A stretch of 64,000 nucleotides of DNA from Octopus sinensis (GCF_006345805.1 NC_043005.1:50034001-50098000), one strand, 5' to 3'. Numbered from the stretch's first letter, positions 16,577-52,115 are shown. The notes: a model not told the origin generated them from the sequence alone. Translations and numbers: made by a program.

Positions 16577-17641
16577 CACGAGGGCTTCTTTCAGTTTCCG
16601 TCTACCAAATCCACTCACAAGGTATTGGTCGGCCCGGGGCTATAGCAGAAGACACTTGCCCAAGATGCCACGCAGTGGGACTGAACCCGGAACCATGTGG
16701 TTGGTTAGCAAGCTACTTACCATACAGCCACTCCTGCGCCTATAGCCTGAGGCTATAGTAGAAGACATTTGCTCAAGGTGTCATGCAGTGGCACTGAACA
16801 CAGAACCATGTGTTTGGGAAGCAAGCTTCTTACCATACAGCCAGGCACATCACCACCTATACTCACACACACACGTGTGTGTGTGTGTATATATTATTCA
16901 ACAAGAATATTATTGATAGTGACTTTGAAATTTTGGTCAGTTAAGCCATTGTCAGACTGATGACAATGGCTTAACTGGCTAAAATTTTGAAATCACTATC
17001 AATAATAATCTTGTTGAAGAATAATAAATTTTCTTCTACAAAAGTATAGTGTAAACCCATCAAATTAATGTAAAACTGTTTTTATTATAACTGACCATAA
17101 AAACGAACACTAACATATACATGTGTATGTGTATACACACACACAAACGTATGCACATAGATAGATTTAGTTATACATACACACACATAAATATCTCTAA
17201 ATATCTATGACTCACTCTTTCTGATGACAAAGAAATGCAAGAAGTCTGTATCACACCACTTCAATATGGCAATACACTCCCATCATGCAATGCAATTACT
17301 AAAGCAATAAAAACATAAATTTCATTTATAGCAATGGTTCTCAAGCATGGTCCATATGCCCTTTGGGGGTCTACGTGACACTTGGAGTCCATACAAGATT
17401 TTGTTGTTAAAATGTATGCACAAATAATTGATTCTGCTTCTTAATATACAAAATATTTTAAGAATTTTTCAAAACATAAGCAGAGGCATGGCTGTGTAGG
17501 AAAAAGCTTGCTTCCCAACCACTTAGTTCTGAGTTCAGTCCCACTGTGTGACACCTTGGGTAAGTGTCTTCTACTATAGCCTCAAACCGACCAAAGCCTT
17601 GTGAGTGGATTTGGTAGATGGAAACTGAAAGAAACTTGTCG

Positions 17642-17673
<32 letters not shown>

Positions 17674-17961
17674 TATAAATTTATACATACATACATAAAA
17701 CAGACTTCTTTTAGTTTCCATCAACCAAATCCAAGGCTGTGGTCAGCCTCTTTACTCTTACTCTTTCACTGTTTCAGTCATTTGACTGTGGCCATGCTGG
17801 AGCACCGCTTTTAGTTGAGCAAATTGACCCCGGGTCTTATTCTTTGTAAGCCCAGTACTTATTCTATCGGTCACTTTTGCCGAACCGCTAAGTGACGGGG
17901 ACGTAAACACACCAGCATCGGTTGTCAAAGCAATGCTAGGGGGACAAACACAGACACACAA

Positions 17962-18002
<41 letters not shown>

Positions 18003-19079
18003 CACGAGGGCTTCTTTCAGTTTCCGTCTACCAAATCCACTCACAAGGTATTGGTCGGCCCGGGGCTATAGCAGAAGACACTTGCCCAAGATGCCACGCA
18101 GTGGGACTGAACCCGGAACCATGTGGTTGGTTAGCAAGCTACTTACCATACAGCCACTCCTGCGCCTATAGCCTGAGGCTATAGTAGAAGACATTTGCTC
18201 AAGGTGTCATGCAGTGGCACTGAACACAGAACCATGTGTTTGGGAAGCAAGCTTCTTACCATACAGCCAGGCACATCACCACCTATACACACACACACAC
18301 ACACACGTGTGTGTGTATATATATATTATTCAACAAGAATATTATTGATAGTGACTTTGAAATTTTGGTCAGTTAAGCCATTGTCAGACTGATGACAATG
18401 GCTTAACTGGCTAAAATTTTGAAATCACTATCAATAATAATCTTGTTGAAGAATAATAAATTTTCTTCTACAAAAGTATAGTGTAAACCCATCAAATTAA
18501 TGTAAAACTGTTTTTATTATAACTGACCATAAAAACGAACACTAACATATACATGTGTATGTGTATACACACACACACACACAAACGTATGCACATAGAT
18601 AGATTTAGTTATACATACACACACATAAATATCTCTAAATATCTATGACTCACTCTTTCTGATGACAAAGAAATGCAAGAAGTCTGTATCACACCACTTC
18701 AATATGGCAATACACTCCCATCATGCAATGCAATTACTAAAGCAATAAAAACATAAATTTCATTTATAGCAATGGTTCTCAAGCATGGTCCATATGCCCT
18801 TTGGGGGTCTACGTGACACTTGGAGTCCATACAAGATTTTGTTGTTAAAATGTATGCACAAATAATTGATTCTGCTTCTTAAATATACAAAATATTTTAA
18901 GAATTTTTCAAAACATAAGCAGAGGCATGGCTGTGTAGGAAAAAGCTTGCTTCCCAACCACTTAGTTCTGAGTTCAGTCCCACTGTGTGACACCTTGGGT
19001 AAGTGTCTTCTACTATAGCCTCAAACCGACCAAAGCCTTGTGAGTGGATTTGGTAGATGGAAACTGAAAGAAACTTGTC

Positions 19080-19110
<31 letters not shown>
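14868..19110. repeat. Compound local tandem duplication a-b-a-b-C-b-C
   Basis: Period about 842 bp (14868-15705 / 15709-16560) and about 1426 bp (16577 / 18003). Junctions fall inside (CA)n/(TA)n. Confidence 0.92.
16897..17018. repeat. Hairpin with about 58-bp arms and a 6-nt spacer (second copy 18329-18450)
   Basis: ...AAGCCATTGTCA-GACTGA-TGACAATGGCTT... Confidence 0.9.
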
Positions 19111-19111
<1 letters not shown>

Positions 19112-19561
19112 CCTTGATAAATTTGATAGGTTTAGCCAGTATAGGCCCAGGCCATGTCTAACTTAATACACCACCTGGTGAAGTCTTTTAGTCCATATAT
19201 GAGGCACCATGGCTCATTCTAGCAAAGAGTTATTATTGTTGGAGACATATCCAGGTGTAGGAGGTTGGTCCGGGATTTTTTGAAGAAATTTGTTCCAGTG
19301 AACATTTGAATTTTATGGGATCTGTTTCTGTTTTGATGTATTTTGGCATAGTATTAAAGAGAGCTTGACCGGTTGGAGTAAAGTAATTGTGACATGATGT
19401 TACTGTGTGTTCCGAGTTCAATTTTTGTAGTGGGCGGATAGCATGGGGGACAAGTCTTGGACGGATTTTAAAATTGATGCTAACATCATTTGTGCAATAT
19501 TGATGGAATAATTTTCCACATCACACAAATGATGTAGCTCTCCTGGCGGCATTGGAGAGAG
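19111..19561 (-). mobile_element. CR1-group (CR1/L2/Crack-like) LINE 3' end
   Basis: SLQCRQESYIICVMWKII...GQALFNTMPKYIKTETDPIKFKCSL/KFLQKIPDQPPTPGYVSNNNNSLLE. Ends against (TA)n. Confidence 0.75.
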
Positions 19562-20773: not shown

Positions 20774-21023
20774 CATAGTAGAGCAGGCTGGTTTATGGGT
20801 TACCCTGGATTTCTTGCTCATAAGGGGTTTAGCCTTACGGCATATCTTCAGACCCCAAAAGCTGCTGGCCTGAGACCTCTTTAAAATATTATGATATTTA
20901 AGATATTTTAAAGAGATCTCAGGTCAGCAGTGTTTGGGCTCTGAAAATAGGCTGTAAGGCTAAACCCCTTATGAGCGAGAGACCCAGGGTAACCCCATAA
21001 ACCGGCCTACCACACTATGATAT
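20770..21023. mobile_element. Fold-back MITE of undetermined superfamily
   Basis: About 115-bp inverted arms, TATCATAGT...GGGTTACCCTGG / CCAGGGTAACCCC...ACTATGATA, with an AT-rich centre. Confidence 0.8.
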
Positions 21024-21103
21024 TAACTGCTCTACATCTTAGAGTGTACCTCTCCCCTGGATTTATGTATTTCTACAAATGATCCTATACATATATATAT
21101 ATA

Positions 21104-21327
21104 AGTTCAGCAAAAATTTAGATTCAGATGAATATGGTACTTAAGTTAAAGGCACCAGAATTTGGTATGGTATTATCCATATAAATCAAATGGGGTGATT
21201 ATAATCACTGTGGCTGAAGAGTGCTCTACATTTTAAAACTGATGTAATACTTACATTGTTTAATTAAATGAAGTAGCATGAAACGATTGTACTACACTAC
21301 CTTTGGATATCCTTGTTGCTTATTTTG

Positions 21328-21332
<5 letters not shown>
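21104..21332 (+). mobile_element. About 230-bp non-coding HHR-bearing element flanked by (TA)n on both sides
   Basis: Unique sequence between TA runs. Contains the module shared with the 51.5 kb element and the plus-strand HHR. Confidence 0.6.
21209..21296 (+). ncRNA. Type I hammerhead ribozyme motif, long stem II, GUA cleavage triplet
   Basis: UGUGG-CUGAAGA-GUGCU...AGCAU-GAAA-CGAUUG-U-A-CUACA. 5-bp stem I, 5-bp stem II base, 59-nt stem II region. Homologous to the 51.6 kb motif. Confidence 0.78.
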
Positions 21333-21387
<55 letters not shown>

Positions 21388-21842
21388 ATATATATATTTG
21401 ATAGGCTTCTTTAAGTTTCTGTCTACCAAATCCACTCACAAGGTTTTGGTTGGCCCAAGGCTACAGTAGAAGACACTTGCCCAACTTTATCATTATTAAA
21501 CTATATCAGGAATATAAATTAGCATGAAACTAATGTGAGTGGTTTTAATTTAGATCAGATTGAAACAAGAATCTTGTACCAAAGAACCTGGTGCAGTTTC
21601 AGGTAGATTGGTAGGATTTGATCAGGTAGATTGGTAGAACACTAGTTGATCAAACTGACCCTAGTATTTGACTGTTACTTTATTTTATGGACCCCAGAAG
21701 GATAAAGGGCAAAGTTGACCGTGACATGATTTGAGCTCTGAATGTAAGGGGCTATAATTAAAACCACAAGCCATTTTGTTCTGCTACTCAACCGATTATG
21801 ATATCTCTGCAAAATTAATATAAAATAAAAAAAAAGTGTTAC

Positions 21843-22003
21843 CTGATTAGCCTTGGGTAAACATTCTAAAATACTAAGCATGAGTTTGGCACTTCCATCA
21901 GGGTCTCCTGGAAGACGCACGGTAAGAGCGTCCAACAACATTTGATACAACACATTAGTAAATAGTGGTTCTGGAAGTTCCCTTAGATAATCCTTTAGAA
22001 CTC
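21843..22003 (-). CDS. syd-1: Internal coding exon of a Syd-1/RhoGAP100F/SYDE-family RhoGAP (middle of the RhoGAP domain)
   Basis: Minus strand reads tttatttgtttcttttcttctctttccag|GAGTTCTA...GCTAATCAG|gtaac, with a strong polypyrimidine tract and AG/GT sites. 161 bp = 2 nt + 53 codons: (G)VLKDYLRELPEPLFTNVLYQMLLDALTVRLPGDPDGSAKLMLSILECLPKANQ. LKDYLRELPEPLFT is the RhoGAP core; the LP.DP.G.AKLMLSIL.CLP.AN segment matches insect Syd-1/RhoGAP100F as I recall it. Confidence 0.92.
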
Positions 22004-22830: not shown

Positions 22831-23754
22831 TTGGGTCATCCCATAAATAATGCATTTTTAAAAATATTTTTTTTATTTTTCAAAATTAAGATAAACAAAG
22901 TTCTTTTTTAATCTAAAATATACTCTCCTTCATTTTCTACAATGCTCTTCGATCTATCTGGTAGACTTGTAAGGCCCCCTCTTCCAAAATTCACTTGTGC
23001 GTGACGAAAAATACTCCTCCAGTATTGTTCAGGCCTTGTCTACAGAATTCATATTTTTTCCATCCAAATGATTCTGAAGACTGCAGAATAAATGATAATC
23101 AGATGGAGCAATGATTGGCGAATATGGTAGATGGGGCACCGCTTCCTATTCAAACTGCTCCAGCCTTTAGAATGTCATCTTCACTGTATGTGGCTGAGCA
23201 TTATCCTGATAGAAGAACACATTTTGTCTTGAAACTAAAGATGGTCATTTTCTGATGGCATGAAGGTGTTGATGGATGATTGAATGACCAAACCCAAGCT
23301 TTACTACTTTCTCAATAGTTACGATAGGGTTTTGTTCCATCAGGGTTTGCAGGACATCTTCGTCAAGCTCTACAGATCTTCCAAGATGAGGCTTATCTTT
23401 TAGACTGTAGTTTCCAGCTCGGAATTTCTGGAACCACCATTGACACTGGCTTGCACTTACTGTCTGATCTCCATGTACTGCATTAATATTCCTTGCACTT
23501 TCCATTGTGTTGTTGCCTTTATCGAATTCATTAAGTAAAATATGTCGAATATGCTCCTTTGTCACTTCCATTATAGCTTTGAAAAAATAACTGTTAAAAT
23601 AGAACTGCACTTTTCAAAACTTGCATTAAGAATAAGGTCAAGGTAAAATTACTACCTGCTTTTATAGCAAGTTGATGCAGGTAGTTTATCCCATCCCCCT
23701 CTGACTTTTAGTTCATGCAATTGAAAAAACTACATTATTTATGGGATGACCCAA
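22831..23754 (-). mobile_element. Internally deleted mariner (924 bp) with intact TIRs and TA TSD
   Basis: TIR TTGGGTCATCCCATAAATAATG at both ends. HTH region MEVTKEHIRHILL...QWWFQKFRAGNYSL is joined directly to QDNAQPH...PYSPIIAPSDYHLF...EGEYILD*. Confidence 0.95.
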
Positions 23755-25522: not shown

Positions 25523-26083
25523 CAGGGTTATTTAAAAGAATGAACTGATTTCATTACCCAATATTTTATAAGGAAAAGAAATAGAAAACTCCATCTAAGT
25601 TGCAAGTATTTACTCATAACTAACTTTTATTTCCTGTCTTACAATTGTTCAATGTGGCCACCATCTGCAGCATGGGTAACAGCTATGCGATAAGAGAATT
25701 CCTCCCAAACGCCTATCAGCATATCACGATCCACTGAGTTGATCGCTGTTGTTATTCGATGTTTAAGGTCATCGAGGTTAGTGGGTAGTGGTGGAACATA
25801 AACACAATCTTTTACATATTCCCACAAGAAAAAAATCTTAAACATCGAATAACAACAGCGATCAACTCAGTGGATCGTGATATGCTGATATGCGTCTGGG
25901 AGGAATTCTCTTATCATATTGATGTTGCCCGTGCTGCAGGTGGTGGCCACATTGAACATTTCTAAGACAGGAAATAAAAGATCGTTGTGAGTAAATACTT
26001 GTGACTTAGCTGGAGTTTTCTATTGTTTTTCCTTATTAAGATAGTGCATAATGAAATCGGTTCGTTCGTTTTGAATAACCCTG
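25523..26083. mobile_element. Fold-back Tc1/mariner element made of two inverted right ends (rosa/DD41D-like C-terminus)
   Basis: TA-flanked TIR CAGGGTTATT. Arms 25523-25767 and 25837-26083 both encode the end of FFLWEYVKDCVYVPPLPTNLDDLKHRITTAINSVDRDML...GGHIEQL. Confidence 0.85.
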
Positions 26084-28384: not shown

Positions 28385-30200
28385 AATAATCCAAAGGAGA
28401 CAATGGGGAAAATGTTGCTCCTGCAGAAAATTAATCCAAGGAGTTGTGGAGCAGATTACGGGGAAACAATATGGTGTATAAAAGGGATGCAATGTGGATA
28501 GGAACTATCAAGACAGAATTACAAGGAGGAAAGGAACAAAGGAATATTGTCGTAAGCATGGGTGATGTGAAAGAACAAGTAATTGCACTAATACCCATAA
28601 CAATGACACTTAGGAAAGTTAAGATGGGTTACCGATGTGGGAAGAAAGGCCCATCACTGAACCATCTTCTGTTTATGGATGACCTGAAATTGTTTGGGAA
28701 ATCTGAAAAACAGATAGAGTCCCTAACCAAAACGGTCTAGAAGTGTAGTTGGAACATCGGTATGGAATTTGGGATCACCAAATACTCAGTACTTAATATG
28801 AAAAGAGGGAAGAAAGCAGCCTGCAGAGGATTGTGGTTACCACCAGGAGAGACCATGGGTGAACCCAACAGTAGTGGGTATAGATATTTAGGGATTTGGG
28901 AGCTGGATGACATTCTACAGAGAGACATGAATGTCAAGATCAGTGAAGCATATCAAAAAAGGGTGAAGATGGTGTTGAAATCCAACCTGAATGCCTAAAA
29001 TTTTATTACTGCAATGAATATCTGGGCAGTTGTGGTGGTCAGACATAGTGTGTTCATCCTCAAATGGACTAAGGAGGAAATGTCAACACTGGATAGAAGG
29101 ATGAGAAAGTTGATGATGCTGCATGGGGTGCTACACCCTAAAGCAAACGTAAACAGATTGTATATGAAAAGAAAGAATGGCGGCAGAGGACCAATTAGTA
29201 TAGACCATTGTATAGGGATTGAAAGGAGAACGCTTGCCGAGTATTTGATAAATAGTGATAAAAACCTGATGCAATATGCCGTGAAAGCTATGTGAGAAAA
29301 TGAAGATGAAATGATGGGCAAGGTAGAATTTAACCAGAGAGCTGAGGAGAAGAGAAAAGAAGACCTTCTTGAAATGAGAATGCATGGACAGTTTGAAAGG
29401 AATACACAAGATGTTAAGGATAATACAGCATCATGGGCATGGCTTGAGCAAGGTAATTTGAAGCATACCACCAAAAGCCTGATCCTTGCTGCAAAAGACC
29501 AGGCTCTTGCTACCAATTCAATGAAGTATAGCATCTATAAAACTTCTGACATCCAGAAATGCAGAATCTGTGGAAAGAGTGTGGAAAATGTATCCCACTT
29601 GGTAAGTGGAGGTGAGAGTCTTGCACCAAAAAATACAAATGTCACCATGATAAAGTGTGTGTGTATCTTCATTGTATCTTATGCCGTAAATACCAATATG
29701 AAGTATCAGAGAACTGGTATGAACATGTACCAAGTAAAGTTATGCAGGAGGATGGAAAAGTAACACTACTCTGGGACTATGATTTTCAGATGGATCATGT
29801 AATTGAACACCGTCGACTGGATATTGTCATATTGAATAAGAGAGTCAAATACTGTCAGATCATTGATGTAGCCATACCAACTGACATGAATGTTGTGAGT
29901 AAAGAGGTTGAAAAAATCACCAAGTACTCTGAATTGAAAGTGGAAATGGCAAGATTGAATGGAATGCAAGAGGGTCATGTAAAAGTGATAGTAGTGGTGA
30001 TCGGAGCATTGGGCTCAATCTCATTGAAACTTCAAGACTTCTTAAGGCAACTGGAAATTCCATGCAAGATGACGTCTTACAAAAAGCAGCCGTATTGGGC
30101 ACAGCGCACATCTTAAGGAAAGTATTAGGTCCTTGTTGTGACTTGACAAATGACTAAAGACTCCGGTGAATTTTTACCTACTCTGTGTTACGAAGGAATA
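28385..30200 (+). mobile_element. R4/Dong-like non-LTR retrotransposon (RT + CCHC knuckle + restriction-like endonuclease), truncated and internally deleted
   Basis: LNHLLFMDDLKLF (RT), YRYLGI, HPKANVNRLYMKRKNGGRG, MHGQF, CRICGKSVENVSHLVSG, HRRLDIVI...IIDVAIP...KEVEKITKY. Several stops and frameshifts. Ends in (AAT)n. Confidence 0.92.
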
Positions 30201-37274: not shown

Positions 37275-38080
37275 TTCTTGAAATGAGAATGCATGGACAG
37301 TTTGAAAGAAATACACAAGATGTTAAGGATAATACAGCAGTGTGGACATGGCTTGAGTGAGGTGATTTGAAGCGTGCCGTCAAAAACTTTATCCTTGCTG
37401 CAAAAGACCAGGCTCTCACTACCAGTTCAATGAAGTATAGCATCTATAAAACTTCTGACACCCAGAAATGAAGAATCTGTAGAAAAAGTGTGGAAAATGT
37501 AACCCACTTGGTAAGTGAAGGTGAGGGCCTTGCACAAAAAGAATACAAATGTCGCCACAATAAAGAGTGTGAGTATCTTCATTGGCTCTTATGCTGTAAA
37601 TACCAATATGAAGTATCAGAGAACTGGTATGAGTATGTACCAAGTAAAGTTATGCAGGAGGATGGAAAAGTAACGATACTCTGGGACTATGATTTTCAGA
37701 TGGATCATGTAATCGAACACCATTGGCTGGATATTGTCATATTGAATAAGAGACACAAATACTGTCAGATCATTGATGTAGCCATACTAAATGACAGGAA
37801 TGTTGTGAGTAAAGAGGTTGAAAAAATCACCAAGTACTCTGAATTGAAAGTGGAAATGGCAAGACTGTATGGAATGCAAGAGTGTAATGTAAAAGTGATA
37901 CTAGGGGTGTTCGGAGCACTGGACTCAATCCCATTGAAACTTCAAAACTTCTTTAAAAAGCAGCATTATTGGACACAGCATGCATCTTAAGGAAAGTATT
38001 ATCTGTCTAAGGTCCTTGTGACTTGACAAATGACTAAAGATTCTGGTGCATTTTTACCTACACTGTTACGAAGGAATAAT
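37275..38080 (+). mobile_element. Second copy of the 28.4-30.2 kb R4/Dong-like element (3' part)
   Basis: About 90% similar by eye to 29370-30200. ORF 37490-37990 carries ENVTHLVS, LAQKEYKCRHN, WDYDFQMDHVIEH and IIDVAI. Same 3' UTR ending GAAGGAATAAT. Confidence 0.9.
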
Positions 38081-51146: not shown

Positions 51147-51452
51147 CGTGTGTATGCGTGTGCATGTACAAATATTCTTTTCTACTCTAGGCACAAGGCC
51201 CGAAATTTTTGTGGGGGAGGTCAGTCGATTAGATTGATCCCCAGTACGCAACTGGTATTTAATTTATCGACGCCGAAAGGATGAATGGCAAAGTCGACCT
51301 CAGCGGAATTTGAACTCAGAATGTAGTGGTAGATGAAAAACATGTACAAATATTAACTGAAGAATACACACATACACATACATTGATATATGCCAACCCA
51401 TATACATACACAAATATACATATACATATGTGGATATTATATATATATATTA

Positions 51453-52115
51453 CAAAGAGCAATAAAGGATTCAAGTTAATTTAAAAAAATTTACTTGAAT
51501 ATGGTACCTAACTTAGATGCACCAAAAAAAAAACTATACTGATTTAACATACAGTAATGTGGGGTGATTATAAGCGAGAAAGACGCAACAAAATGGATAG
51601 GTTTTTAGTACGATCGTTTCATCAAGGGACAGTTTTATTAAAAGTTGCAAAGATTACAGCATATAAACGAGTCCGTACTCATCAGCTAAAATACATGTAA
51701 GTTCTCAGACATCCTAGTGTTTGAGGCTATACTCATGAAGTATGTAGATAATTAAACAGATTTCTAAAGTTCATTAAAGTTCTTTAAAGATGATGTACAG
51801 TCTTATCACAGAATTTAAAAAAGTTTTGATAGCACATCACAGAGAAGGTGACCTAATCCATATGAATTTCCATAGATATGATGAGGGATTATATACTCAC
51901 AGAAGACAAATTTACCATTGTTAATTACAACGAGGTGGGTCTCAATTCCTGCTATTAGCATTACAGAGAGGGTGAATTAATCCTTGTATATAGCACAGAT
52001 TCCAATGGTGTAGATGTAAAAATTTCCAGAGAAATGGAGATGAATTTCATATTCACAGGCGATAAATTTTACAATGGTTGAACACAATGAGGTAGGTATC
52101 ATTATATATATATAT
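51453..52115 (-). mobile_element. About 660-bp non-coding HHR-bearing element ending in (TA)n
   Basis: No recognisable ORF. Carries the minus-strand HHR and the shared 76-bp module; TA runs at both ends. Confidence 0.5.
51603..51691 (-). ncRNA. Type I hammerhead ribozyme motif, long stem II, GUA cleavage triplet
   Basis: Minus strand: UUUUAG-CUGAUGA-[58 nt]-GAAA-CGAUCG-U-A-CUAAAA. 6-bp stem I, intact core, palindromic stem III. Stem II is imperfect (G-U closing pair, GGAC/GUCC). Confidence 0.75.

What the first reader, a model, noticed from the sequence alone, without database searches (positions are those of the whole stretch)
51603..51691. Complete hammerhead on the same strand as the Syd-1 pre-mRNA
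The minus-strand motif has an intact core, a perfect 6-bp stem I, a palindromic CGAUCG stem III and a GUA triplet, with predicted cleavage between 51609 and 51608. The host exon is also on the minus strand and no upstream exon was found before 64000, so this is probably in the same intron. An active intronic ribozyme could cut the nascent transcript of a presynaptic-assembly gene. Stem II is imperfect, so activity is uncertain.
Basis: partly seen in the sequence, partly recalled or inferred. Interest (0 to 1): 0.8.

Follow-up and report, generated by a model that had tools for sequence, protein, structure and literature searches.

The report
Decayed hammerhead-bearing repeat copy in an intron
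The hammerhead ribozyme motif is really there, but it is one of two diverged copies of a short mobile repeat that carries such a ribozyme, and this copy looks too decayed to cut the host gene's RNA efficiently, so it is an ordinary relic rather than a regulator.

Summary
On the minus strand at 51691..51603 there is a complete type I hammerhead core: CUGAUGA, GAAA and GUA|C, with cleavage between 51609 and 51608. Helix I has 6 bp and ACGAUCGU is an 8-nt palindrome. Rfam Hammerhead_1 matches these exact coordinates below threshold (21.1 bits, cut-off 34).

A second, homologous copy lies on the plus strand at 21209..21296. The two are only 63% identical overall, yet all 12 invariant core nucleotides are kept. 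Helices I and II carry compensatory changes, and both copies have the same unusual ~58-nt helix II.

Flanking homology points to a ~320-nt foldback element (arm, hammerhead, spacer, inverted arm) next to (TA)n microsatellites. This resembles retrozyme or Penelope-type hammerhead repeats. The class is unresolved.

The flagged copy has lost helix II pairs next to the core. Its hammerhead fold is predicted 9-13 kcal/mol above an alternative fold that buries the cleavage site. It has no partner copy nearby.

It is on the sense strand, 29.6 kb upstream of the only RhoGAP exon in the window, so it is probably intronic. Nothing indicates a role for the host gene. The Syd-1 identity was not tested. 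Verdict: a relic of a known kind, of low interest.

The parts
51603..51691 (-). Copy A (the finding): a complete type I hammerhead-like motif. Helix I is 51691-51686 with 51608-51603. The core CUGAUGA is 51685-51679. Helix II with its insert is 51678-51621. GAAA is 51620-51617. Helix III with its loop is 51617-51610. Predicted cleavage is between A 51609 and C 51608.
   Evidence: Sequence read. The descriptor finds it. Rfam Hammerhead_1 gives 21.1 bits at these coordinates. The covariance model R1 gives 90.1 bits.
51574..51602 (-). Spacer downstream of hammerhead A. It is homologous to the tail of copy B (TATCC..TTGTTGC..TTAT).
   Evidence: The on-diagonal blastn match 51686-51579 to 21213-21325, E=1e-5. 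Alignments.
51473..51573 (-). Arm rcY. It is the reverse complement of the arm that lies upstream of the hammerhead in copy B.
   Evidence: Local alignment score 29 against a shuffle mean of 11.3 (sd 1.9), with 0 of 2000 shuffles reaching it. nhmmer E=0.02.
51355..51460 (.). (TA/CA)n microsatellite that abuts the end of copy A.
   Evidence: The microRNA-like Rfam hits here are low-complexity artefacts.
21209..21296 (+). Copy B: the homologous hammerhead-like motif on the opposite strand. Helix I is UGUGG/CUACA. The core CUGAAGA is 21214-21220. Helix II is a roughly 23-bp hairpin. GAAA is 21280-21283. Loop 3 is GAUU. Predicted cleavage is between 21291 and 21292.
   Evidence: Its minimum-energy fold is the hammerhead fold. 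Rfam Hammerhead_1 gives 15.4 bits. R1 gives 105.6 bits.
21103..21204 (+). Arm Y of copy B, 4 nt upstream of its hammerhead. It is the complement of arm rcY of copy A.
21297..21330 (+). Tail of copy B, homologous to the spacer of copy A. It runs into (TA)n at 21331-21398, where the second arm would be expected.
21843..22003 (-). Host-gene exon encoding part of a RhoGAP domain. It is the only exon of this gene found in the window.
   Evidence: Pfam PF00620, E=1.3e-9, profile positions 58-108 of 148. tblastn with the ortholog gives 92.6% identity. Splice sites read. 69 homologous exon fragments were found.

Best explanation
The motif is a solo, partly decayed copy of a short interspersed repeat of about 0.3 kb and 33% G+C. 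The ancestral element carried a genuine type I hammerhead ribozyme.

The ancestral ribozyme is inferred to have had the usual metazoan architecture: a 6-bp helix I, and a 2-bp helix III closed by a palindromic tetraloop. It also had an unusually long helix II hairpin of about 23 bp. It sat between two inverted arms of about 100 nt.

In the element's own life cycle, the ribozyme would have cut read-through or multimeric transcripts into unit lengths, as in retrozymes and Penelope-like elements. This step is inferred.

Copy A landed, or was truncated, in sense orientation in a very long intron of a RhoGAP-domain gene. Since then it has lost helix II pairs next to the core. It has also gained a competing helix that buries the cleavage site. 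It is therefore most likely inactive, or only marginally active, and has no role for the host gene.

Shown: the motif, its second copy, the covariation, the preferential conservation of the core, the arm arrangement and the predicted misfolding. Inferred: the ancestral activity, the mobility mechanism, the intronic position and the present inactivity.
For: - Two homologous copies. They share the 17-mer ATGAAACGATYGTACTA without mismatch. The helix II inserts are 58 and 59 nt and align with P=0.011. There is an on-diagonal blastn match with E=1e-5.
- Core conservation. Overall identity is 57 of 91 columns, but all 12 strictly conserved core nucleotides are identical (Fisher p=0.002). The core plus adjacent blocks are 25/27 identical against 32/64 elsewhere (p=6e-5). 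The only core difference is at N7, the one position free to vary.
- Covariation. Helix I changes U-A to G-C. Helix II changes G-C to C-G and G.U to U-A. 86.7% of cells are paired, against 36-47% when the partners are slid.
- Copy B's minimum-energy fold is the hammerhead fold.
- Both copies are sub-threshold, end-to-end matches to Rfam Hammerhead_1.
- A 6-bp helix I and a short palindromic helix III are the published hallmarks of metazoan type I hammerheads (PMC4209133). Two base pairs plus a tetraloop is called typical of invertebrates (PMC7229834).
- The reverse complement of A's downstream flank matches B's upstream flank, about 9 sd above shuffles. This gives an arm-HH-spacer-arm foldback. 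Its size and G+C fit the '170-400 nt, highly self-paired, <45% GC' retrozymes (PMC7229834).
- Both copies abut (TA)n. That is a reported preferred target of Penelope-like elements (PMC8557442).
- Decay of copy A. Pairs 10.3/11.3 and 10.4/11.4 are broken. The hammerhead fold lies 9-13 kcal/mol above the minimum-energy fold in every context tried, against 1-6 kcal/mol for copy B.
- CpG observed/expected is 0.29. This fits U11.1 (in both copies) and the GAUU loop (in B) being C-to-T decay at CpG.
Against: - Only two copies could be examined, so covariation rests on single events.
- The structure used for counting was derived from copy B.
- The conserved blocks were partly chosen after seeing the alignment.
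- Both copies score below the Rfam gathering cut-off.
- Both have G10.1.U11.1 instead of the highly conserved G-C.
- No loop-loop tertiary contact can be recognised.
- Neither copy is in tandem, which is the defining arrangement of metazoan retrozymes.
- No RT or GIY-YIG remnant lies within 2.7 kb upstream of copy A.
- Fold z-scores are not significant: -0.40 for A and -0.83 for B.
- Natural hammerheads with 2-bp helix II, or even a mismatch at 10.1/11.1, can be active (PMC3088659). Inactivity of copy A is therefore predicted, not shown.
Confidence: 0.6

Rival explanations
1. The element is a foldback or MITE-like DNA repeat that targets TA. Its hammerhead boxes are fortuitous. A and B share them only by common descent, and no ribozyme ever existed.
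For: - About 100-nt inverted arms flank a central hairpin, with (TA)n on the flanks.
- Neither copy is in tandem, and there is no RT nearby.
- Both copies are below the Rfam threshold.
- Descriptor matches of this looseness occur at 0.009-0.08 per 64 kb, so hundreds are expected per large genome.
- 63 chance matches to the core-plus-helix-III pattern were found in bacterial genes.
Against: - The core is conserved far better than the rest of the element (p=0.002 and p=6e-5).
- The only core change is at the free position N7.
- There are compensatory changes in helices I and II.
- Helix III matches the Rfam type I consensus ACG..CGU and is palindromic. No shuffle out of 1500 reproduced that.
Confidence: 0.2
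2. Copy A is a catalytically competent intronic ribozyme that cuts the nascent pre-mRNA of the Syd-1-like gene and so affects its expression, as a domesticated hammerhead.
For: - The core is intact, the orientation is sense and the position is probably intronic.
- Intronic type I hammerheads derived from retroelements are known and active in amniotes: RECK, C10orf118 and DTNB (PMC6155905, PMC3088659).
- Hammerheads with 2-bp helix II can be active (PMC3088659).
- Monomeric invertebrate retrozyme copies self-cleave in vitro (PMC7229834).
Against: - Helix II next to the core is degraded relative to copy B.
- A competing 13-bp helix is predicted, and the hammerhead fold takes about 1e-7 to 1e-10 of the ensemble.
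- There is no partner copy to form the extended helix III.
- No tertiary-contact loops can be recognised.
- It is a member of a dispersed repeat, with another copy antisense to the same gene.
- No conservation evidence is available. The only ortholog locus obtained is too distant, and it holds no such motif within 10 kb of the exon.
Confidence: 0.07
3. It is an intron-encoded C/D box snoRNA, with CUGAUGA as the C box and UUGAUGA as the C' box.
For: - A UGAUGA box lies near the 5' end, there is a 6-bp terminal stem, the length is about 89 nt and the setting is a sense-strand intron.
- There is a weak Rfam hit to Afu_294: 16.6 bits against a gathering score of 43.
Against: - There is no D box. 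The sequence before the 3' stem arm is UCGUA, and the arm itself is CUAAAA, not CUGA.
- The base before UGAUGA is C, not a purine.
- No snoRNA family reaches threshold.
- The homologous copy B is antisense to the gene.
Confidence: 0.01

Closest known systems
Metazoan type I hammerhead ribozymes of non-LTR retrozymes (newt satellite 2, Schistosoma Sm-alpha, coral and mussel retrozymes; Rfam RF00163)
   Same: - Type I topology with an intact 13-nt core.
- 6-bp helix I.
- Helix III of 2 bp with a palindromic tetraloop, matching the ACG..CGU consensus of RF00163.
- Low G+C.
- An inferred unit of about 320 nt with strong self-pairing (PMC7229834, PMC4209133).
   Different: - Helix II is a 58/59-nt irregular hairpin of about 23 bp, not 4 bp plus a 6-nt loop.
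- G10.1.U11.1 replaces G-C.
- No recognisable loop 1/loop 2 contact.
- The copies are solitary, 30 kb apart and in opposite orientation, not in tandem arrays.
- Both score below the Rfam gathering cut-off (21.1 and 15.4 bits against 34).
Minimal hammerheads in the pseudo-LTRs of Penelope-like elements
   Same: - Short palindromic helix III.
- Association with a mobile element.
- Insertion next to (TA)n.
- The inverted-copy-plus-direct-copy arrangement described for Penelope-like insertions could explain arm Y of copy B (PMC8557442, PMC4209133).
   Different: - No RT or GIY-YIG coding remnant within 2.7 kb upstream of copy A.
- Copy B is bounded by (TA)n on both sides.
[quoted passage not shown] Neither is seen here.
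- No tandem partner.
Intronic hammerheads of amniotes (HH9/HH10; RECK, C10orf118, DTNB)
   Same: - Type I hammerhead.
- Sense strand of an intron of a protein-coding gene.
- Thought to derive from retroelement hammerheads (PMC6155905).
   Different: - Those are single-copy and conserved across birds and mammals.
- They have stable helices with tertiary contacts or pseudoknots, and they cleave in vitro (PMC3088659).
- This one is a decayed repeat copy with no conservation evidence and a predicted misfold.

Membership tests
Hammerhead ribozyme, type I (Rfam RF00163) | Conserved core: C3 U4 G5 A6 N7 G8 A9, G12 A13 A14, the A15.1-U16.1 pair, and H17 at the cleavage site | tested here: met
   Copy A has CUGAUGA...GAAA...U-A|C. 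Copy B has CUGAAGA...GAAA...U-A|C. All 12 fixed positions are identical in both copies.
Hammerhead ribozyme, type I (Rfam RF00163) | Three helices around the core, with helix I open-ended | tested here: inconclusive
   Helix I has 6 bp in A and 5 bp in B. Helix III has 2 bp plus a tetraloop in both. Helix II is sound in B: 5 closing pairs and about 23 bp in all. In A only G.U and U-A remain before a 2x4 internal loop.
Hammerhead ribozyme, type I (Rfam RF00163) | G10.1-C11.1 closing pair of helix II | tested here: not met
   It is G.U in both copies. This may be C-to-U decay at a CpG (CpG observed/expected 0.29), but that is inference.
Hammerhead ribozyme, type I (Rfam RF00163) | Score at or above the curated gathering cut-off (34 bits) | tested here: not met
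   21.1 bits for A and 15.4 bits for B. There is no hit in the whole-window gathering scan. The long insertion in helix II accounts for much of the shortfall.
Hammerhead ribozyme, type I (Rfam RF00163) | Site-specific self-cleavage giving 2',3'-cyclic phosphate and 5'-OH ends | not testable with these tools
   This needs in vitro transcription and cleavage, or end-specific RNA sequencing.
Metazoan non-LTR retrozyme | Short tandem repeats (dimers to multimers), each with one type I hammerhead | tested here: not met
   No tandem repeat includes either copy. The covariance model R1 finds no third copy in 64 kb with filters off. nhmmer finds none either.
Metazoan non-LTR retrozyme | Unit of about 170-400 nt, G+C below 45%, highly self-paired RNA | tested here: inconclusive
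   A unit of about 320 nt is inferred by combining the two partial copies: arm Y from B and arm rcY from A. G+C of the hammerhead part is 0.32-0.34. No single copy has both arms.
Metazoan non-LTR retrozyme | Expression as linear and circular unit-length RNAs | not testable with these tools
   No transcript data are available.
Penelope-like element (hammerhead in the pseudo-LTR) | Adjacent ORF with a telomerase-like RT and a GIY-YIG endonuclease | tested here: not met
   A Pfam scan of all three sense frames of the 2.7 kb upstream of copy A gives no RT or GIY-YIG hit. Copy B is delimited by (TA)n 105 nt upstream.
Penelope-like element (hammerhead in the pseudo-LTR) | Insertion bias for (TA)n microsatellites, with inverted truncated copies | tested here: met
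   (TA)n lies at 21090-21104 and 21331-21398 around copy B, and at 51355-51460 after copy A. The arms are in an inverted relationship. This is compatible with the family but not specific to it.
Domesticated intronic hammerhead (amniote HH9/HH10 type) | Sense orientation inside an intron of the host gene | tested here: inconclusive
   Same strand as an internal RhoGAP exon with canonical splice sites. The exon covers profile positions 58-108 of 148, so upstream exons must exist. None is found between 22 and 64 kb. No gene model or RNA data are available.
Domesticated intronic hammerhead (amniote HH9/HH10 type) | Conservation at the orthologous position across species | not testable with these tools
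   The only ortholog locus obtained (L001) aligns with the window only in the exon, at 74% nucleotide identity. It reaches only 10 kb from the exon and holds no related motif.
C/D box snoRNA | C box RUGAUGA near the 5' end, D box CUGA near the 3' end, and a terminal stem | tested here: not met
   No CUGA precedes the 3' stem arm. The best snoRNA hit is 16.6 bits against a cut-off of 43.

The most novel reading that the evidence does not exclude
Copy A is still catalytically competent in vivo, for example helped by co-transcriptional folding or by proteins. It would then cleave the nascent transcript of the Syd-1-like RhoGAP gene inside a >40-kb intron. That would make it an invertebrate counterpart of the domesticated intronic hammerheads of amniotes, acting on a presynaptic-assembly gene.

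A milder version is also open. The two copies may reveal an undescribed retrozyme-like family with a ~23-bp helix II and ~100-nt foldback arms, which disperses as single copies into (TA)n.
Probability: 0.06. Interest if true: 0.65.

Novelty: new member of a known kind. Interest (0 to 1): 0.28.

Why it matters
Hammerhead motifs inside repeats are abundant in invertebrate genomes. Mussel and coral have thousands, and 235 Rfam Hammerhead_1 hits were reported for the giant squid (PMC7229834, PMC6962438). One more decayed copy in an intron is therefore not surprising.

There are two modest points of interest. First, the family has an unusually long helix II and foldback arms, and it occurs as solitary copies next to (TA)n. 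If a genome-wide census confirmed this, it would add a variant to the retrozyme/Penelope-like hammerhead repertoire. Second, sense-strand intronic copies like this one are the raw material from which domesticated intronic ribozymes could arise.

For the host gene, the practical message is that there is no reason to expect ribozyme-mediated regulation.

Tried and rejected
- **Rfam scans.** The whole-window scan at gathering threshold and a 701-nt scan at E<=10 gave no hammerhead. Only 191-nt scans with laxer filters exposed the sub-threshold Hammerhead_1 alignments.
- **Single-sequence folding.** z-scores are -0.40 for A and -0.83 for B, so this is uninformative.
- **MAFFT with 500-nt flanks.** It misaligned the copies on microsatellites. 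This was replaced by anchored alignments.
- **More copies in the window.** blastn, nhmmer and the covariance model R1 with filters off found none beyond A and B.
- **Relatives elsewhere.** Two metagenome pattern scans were run. The first returned nothing. The second returned 63 matches, all in unrelated, mostly G+C-richer bacterial-type sequence, with helix I of at least 5 bp in only two.
- **Orthologous retention.** The related-species contig L001 aligns only in the exon and holds no related motif.
- **Penelope-like coding remnants.** None upstream of copy A. An earlier attempt failed on stop codons.
- **Upstream RhoGAP exons.** An arginine-finger regex, L001 ORFs and hand-written consensus queries (heuristic only) found only the known exon.
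- **C/D snoRNA reading.** Rejected for lack of a D box.
- **Do not use.** The 'A+-40' block picked the wrong CUGA. One search supersedes it. In one search the 'core+adjacent' line used wrong columns and is corrected. The 'strict 12' line is valid.
- **Not attempted.** A protein-database search with the 50-aa antisense ORF over copy A. It was judged very unlikely to retrieve repeat copies for its cost.

Full report
**1. The observation**

Read on the minus strand, positions 51691-51603 spell UUUUAG-CUGAUGA-[58 nt]-GAAA-CGAUCG-UA|C-UAAAA.
- The seven-nucleotide box and GAAA are intact.
- A15.1 (51617) can pair with U16.1 (51610).
- The triplet is GUA, and the scissile bond falls between 51609 and 51608.
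- UUUUAG pairs perfectly with CUAAAA.

One qualification concerns CGAUCG. As a hairpin it would leave a 2-nt loop, which cannot form. The realistic monomeric helix III is A-U and C-G closed by a GAUC tetraloop. The octamer ACGAUCGU is self-complementary, so two copies could also form an extended helix III.

Helix II is weak. It has G.U and U-A, then a 2x4 internal loop, then GGAC/GUCC and an A+U-rich distal part.

**2. Is it more than chance?**

- A descriptor set no stricter than the candidate itself (CUGANGA, helix I of at least 6 bp, at least two closing pairs in helix II, helix III of at least 2 bp) finds only this site in both strands of the window.
- Over 1500 dinucleotide-preserving shuffles, the expectation is 0.009 per window. 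It rises to 0.08 if helix II is left unconstrained. It is zero if helix III must be palindromic.
- Rfam reports nothing at gathering threshold and nothing in a 701-nt scan.
- In a 191-nt scan with laxer filters, Hammerhead_1 (RF00163) aligns end to end at exactly 51603-51691(-). The score is 21.1 bits against a cut-off of 34. Rescaled to this one family over the whole window, E is about 5e-4.

The motif is therefore unusual for a single window. It is not significant for a gigabase genome, where tens to hundreds of such matches would occur by chance. An empirical reminder came from metagenomes. A pattern holding the core plus this helix III sequence matched 63 contigs of unrelated, mostly G+C-richer sequence that look like bacterial genes. 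Only two of them had a helix I of 5 bp or more.

**3. A second copy changes the picture**

Relaxing helix I to 4 bp or more exposed a second site on the plus strand, 21209-21296. It reads UGUGG-CUGAAGA-[59 nt]-GAAA-CGAUUG-UA|C-UACA. It is homologous to the first site, not an independent match.
- Both contain ATGAAACGATYGTACTA without mismatch.
- The helix II inserts differ in length by one nucleotide and align better than shuffles (P=0.011).
- blastn gives an on-diagonal match, 51686-51579 to 21213-21325, with E=1e-5.

Overall identity is only 57 of 91 columns, and the differences are not spread evenly.
- All 12 strictly conserved core nucleotides are identical (Fisher p=0.002).
- The core with its adjacent blocks is 25/27 identical, against 32/64 for the rest (p=6e-5).
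- The two differences in those blocks are at N7, the one core position free to vary, and in loop 3.

On the hammerhead structure:
- Helix I shows a U-A to G-C exchange and an A-U to G.U change.
- Helix II shows G-C to C-G and G.U to U-A exchanges.
- 86.7% of cells are paired, against 36-47% when the 3' partners are slid by 1-3 columns.

Copy B's minimum-energy and centroid folds are the hammerhead fold, with a helix II of about 23 bp. Rfam Hammerhead_1 also aligns to B end to end, at 15.4 bits.

The caveats are real. There are two sequences only, the counted structure was derived from B, and the conserved blocks were partly chosen after the fact. Even so, the pattern is what one expects from lineages of a source element that were selected to keep a working hammerhead. 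It is not what uniform neutral decay of a fortuitous motif would give.

**4. The element around it**

Downstream of hammerhead A, the minus strand carries a roughly 30-nt spacer. Then comes a stretch of about 100 nt (51573-51473) whose reverse complement matches the 100 nt immediately upstream of hammerhead B (21103-21204). The local score is 29 against 11.3 +/- 1.9 for shuffles, with 0 of 2000 shuffles reaching it. nhmmer gives E=0.02.

The 33 nt after hammerhead B align with A's spacer. They then run into (TA)n at 21331-21398, just where the second arm should start. Copy B's arm begins at a short (TA)n (21090-21104). Copy A's arm ends 23 nt before a (TA/CA)n tract.

The simplest ancestor is arm Y, then 4 nt, the hammerhead, the spacer, then arm rcY. 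That is about 320 nt at about 33% G+C. Copy A lacks the 5' arm and copy B lacks the 3' arm.

This fits the published description of metazoan non-LTR retrozymes: type I hammerhead, 170-400 nt, low G+C and highly self-paired RNA (PMC7229834). The exception is that neither copy is in tandem.

It also recalls Penelope-like insertions: a hammerhead near the 3' end, an inverted truncated copy next to a direct one, and (TA)n targets (PMC8557442). However, no RT or GIY-YIG remnant lies within 2.7 kb upstream of copy A.

A TA-targeting foldback DNA element is not excluded. I could not resolve the class. No further copy exists in the window, and the source genome is not in any DNA collection the tools can search.

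**5. How copy A is likely to behave**

Compared with B, copy A has lost pairs 10.3/11.3 and 10.4/11.4.

Its 5' helix II strand (AGUACGG) is complementary to UCGUACU at the cleavage site. The predicted minimum-energy structure is a 13-bp helix that buries GAAA, helix III and the scissile bond.

The hammerhead fold is at -3.2 kcal/mol against -12.0, which is about 1e-7 of the ensemble. It stays 9-13 kcal/mol above the minimum with 20, 40 or 80 nt of flank. Copy B is only 1-6 kcal/mol above.

Helix III is of the short type. In newt and axolotl elements this type needs a second copy for efficient cleavage. Two base pairs plus a tetraloop is described as the invertebrate type, and monomeric coral and mussel units do cleave (PMC4209133, PMC7229834). 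No partner copy is nearby.

Both copies have U at 11.1, giving G.U instead of the conserved G-C. This position and B's loop 3 change are both C-to-T at CpG. The window is strongly CpG-depleted (observed/expected 0.29), so decay by deamination is a reasonable inference.

Energy models ignore tertiary contacts, and natural hammerheads with two-pair helix II are active (PMC3088659). Inactivity is therefore a prediction, not a result.

**6. The host gene**

The only recognisable exon is on the minus strand at 22003-21843.
- It has a polypyrimidine-AG acceptor and a GTAA donor.
- It matches Pfam RhoGAP positions 58-108 of 148 (E=1.3e-9).
- It is 92.6% identical in protein to the exon of a distant species (L001).

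It begins in the middle of the domain, so upstream coding exons must exist. None is found between 22 and 64 kb. The next downstream exon of L001 is also absent from the window's 21.8 kb.

Copy A, 29.6 kb upstream on the same strand, is thus very probably within an intron of at least 42 kb. This was not demonstrated. That the gene is Syd-1 was not tested.

Copy B lies about 550 nt beyond the exon's donor site and is antisense to the gene, so it is not a hammerhead in the pre-mRNA.

**7. Comparison and verdict**

By mechanism, this is a hammerhead of the metazoan type I kind borne by a mobile repeat. As a family member it fails two formal tests, the Rfam cut-off and G10.1-C11.1. It fails the tandem-array criterion of retrozymes and the coding-capacity criterion of Penelope-like elements. 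I therefore file it as a new, atypical member of the known kind 'repeat-borne type I hammerhead', not as a member of a named element family.

It is not supported as to an active, gene-specific ribozyme.

- Best explanation: relic copy, 0.6.
- Fortuitous motif in a foldback repeat: 0.2.
- Active intronic ribozyme: 0.07.
- snoRNA: 0.01.

Interest is low to moderate. Such motifs are common in invertebrate genomes (PMC7229834, PMC6962438). Only the unusual helix II and foldback architecture, or an unexpected demonstration of cleavage in vivo, would raise it.

Noticed in passing
window 21209-21296 (+), with arm 21103-21204: A second, better-folding hammerhead-like copy of the same repeat. It is antisense to the RhoGAP gene and about 550 nt from the exon. 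Predicted cleavage is between 21291 and 21292.
   Followed up: yes
window 51163-51354: A SINE-like insertion of about 165 bp (51177-51340) is flanked by a perfect 14-bp direct repeat, CATGTACAAATATT, which looks like a target-site duplication. At least a dozen related copies are scattered through the window.
   Followed up: partly
window about 16900-19160: An apparent tandem duplication of about 1.43 kb. There are identical model hits at 16917-16998 and 18349-18430. There are identical ORFs at 17264-17440 and 18702-18878.
   Followed up: no
window 23245-23610 (-), 25642-25866 (-), 28444-30116 (+), 37490-37990 (+): Transposon coding remnants inside the same intron: mariner/Tc1-like transposase pieces and LINE-type reverse-transcriptase ORFs, recognised by eye from the translations.
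   Followed up: no
window 51339-51454: Sub-threshold Rfam hits to mir-297, mir-466, mir-1277 and similar families fall in a (TA/CA)n microsatellite. They are low-complexity artefacts.
   Followed up: partly
whole window: There is strong CpG depletion (observed/expected 0.29, with GpC at 1.03). This suggests germline DNA methylation across this intronic region. The TpG/CpA excess is partly inflated by (TG)n and (CA)n tracts.
   Followed up: no
window 20797-20996: A palindromic, hairpin-forming element lies just upstream of copy B. It has a very weak hammerhead-like regex hit at 20855-20797(-) and hairpin hits on both strands at 20854-20938. Its relation to copy B is unknown.
   Followed up: no
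L041 1977-2068 (+) and L057 5245-5330 (+): Two of the 63 metagenome pattern matches also have a helix I of 5-6 bp. They could be genuine bacterial or phage hammerheads. They are unrelated to the window's family.
   Followed up: no
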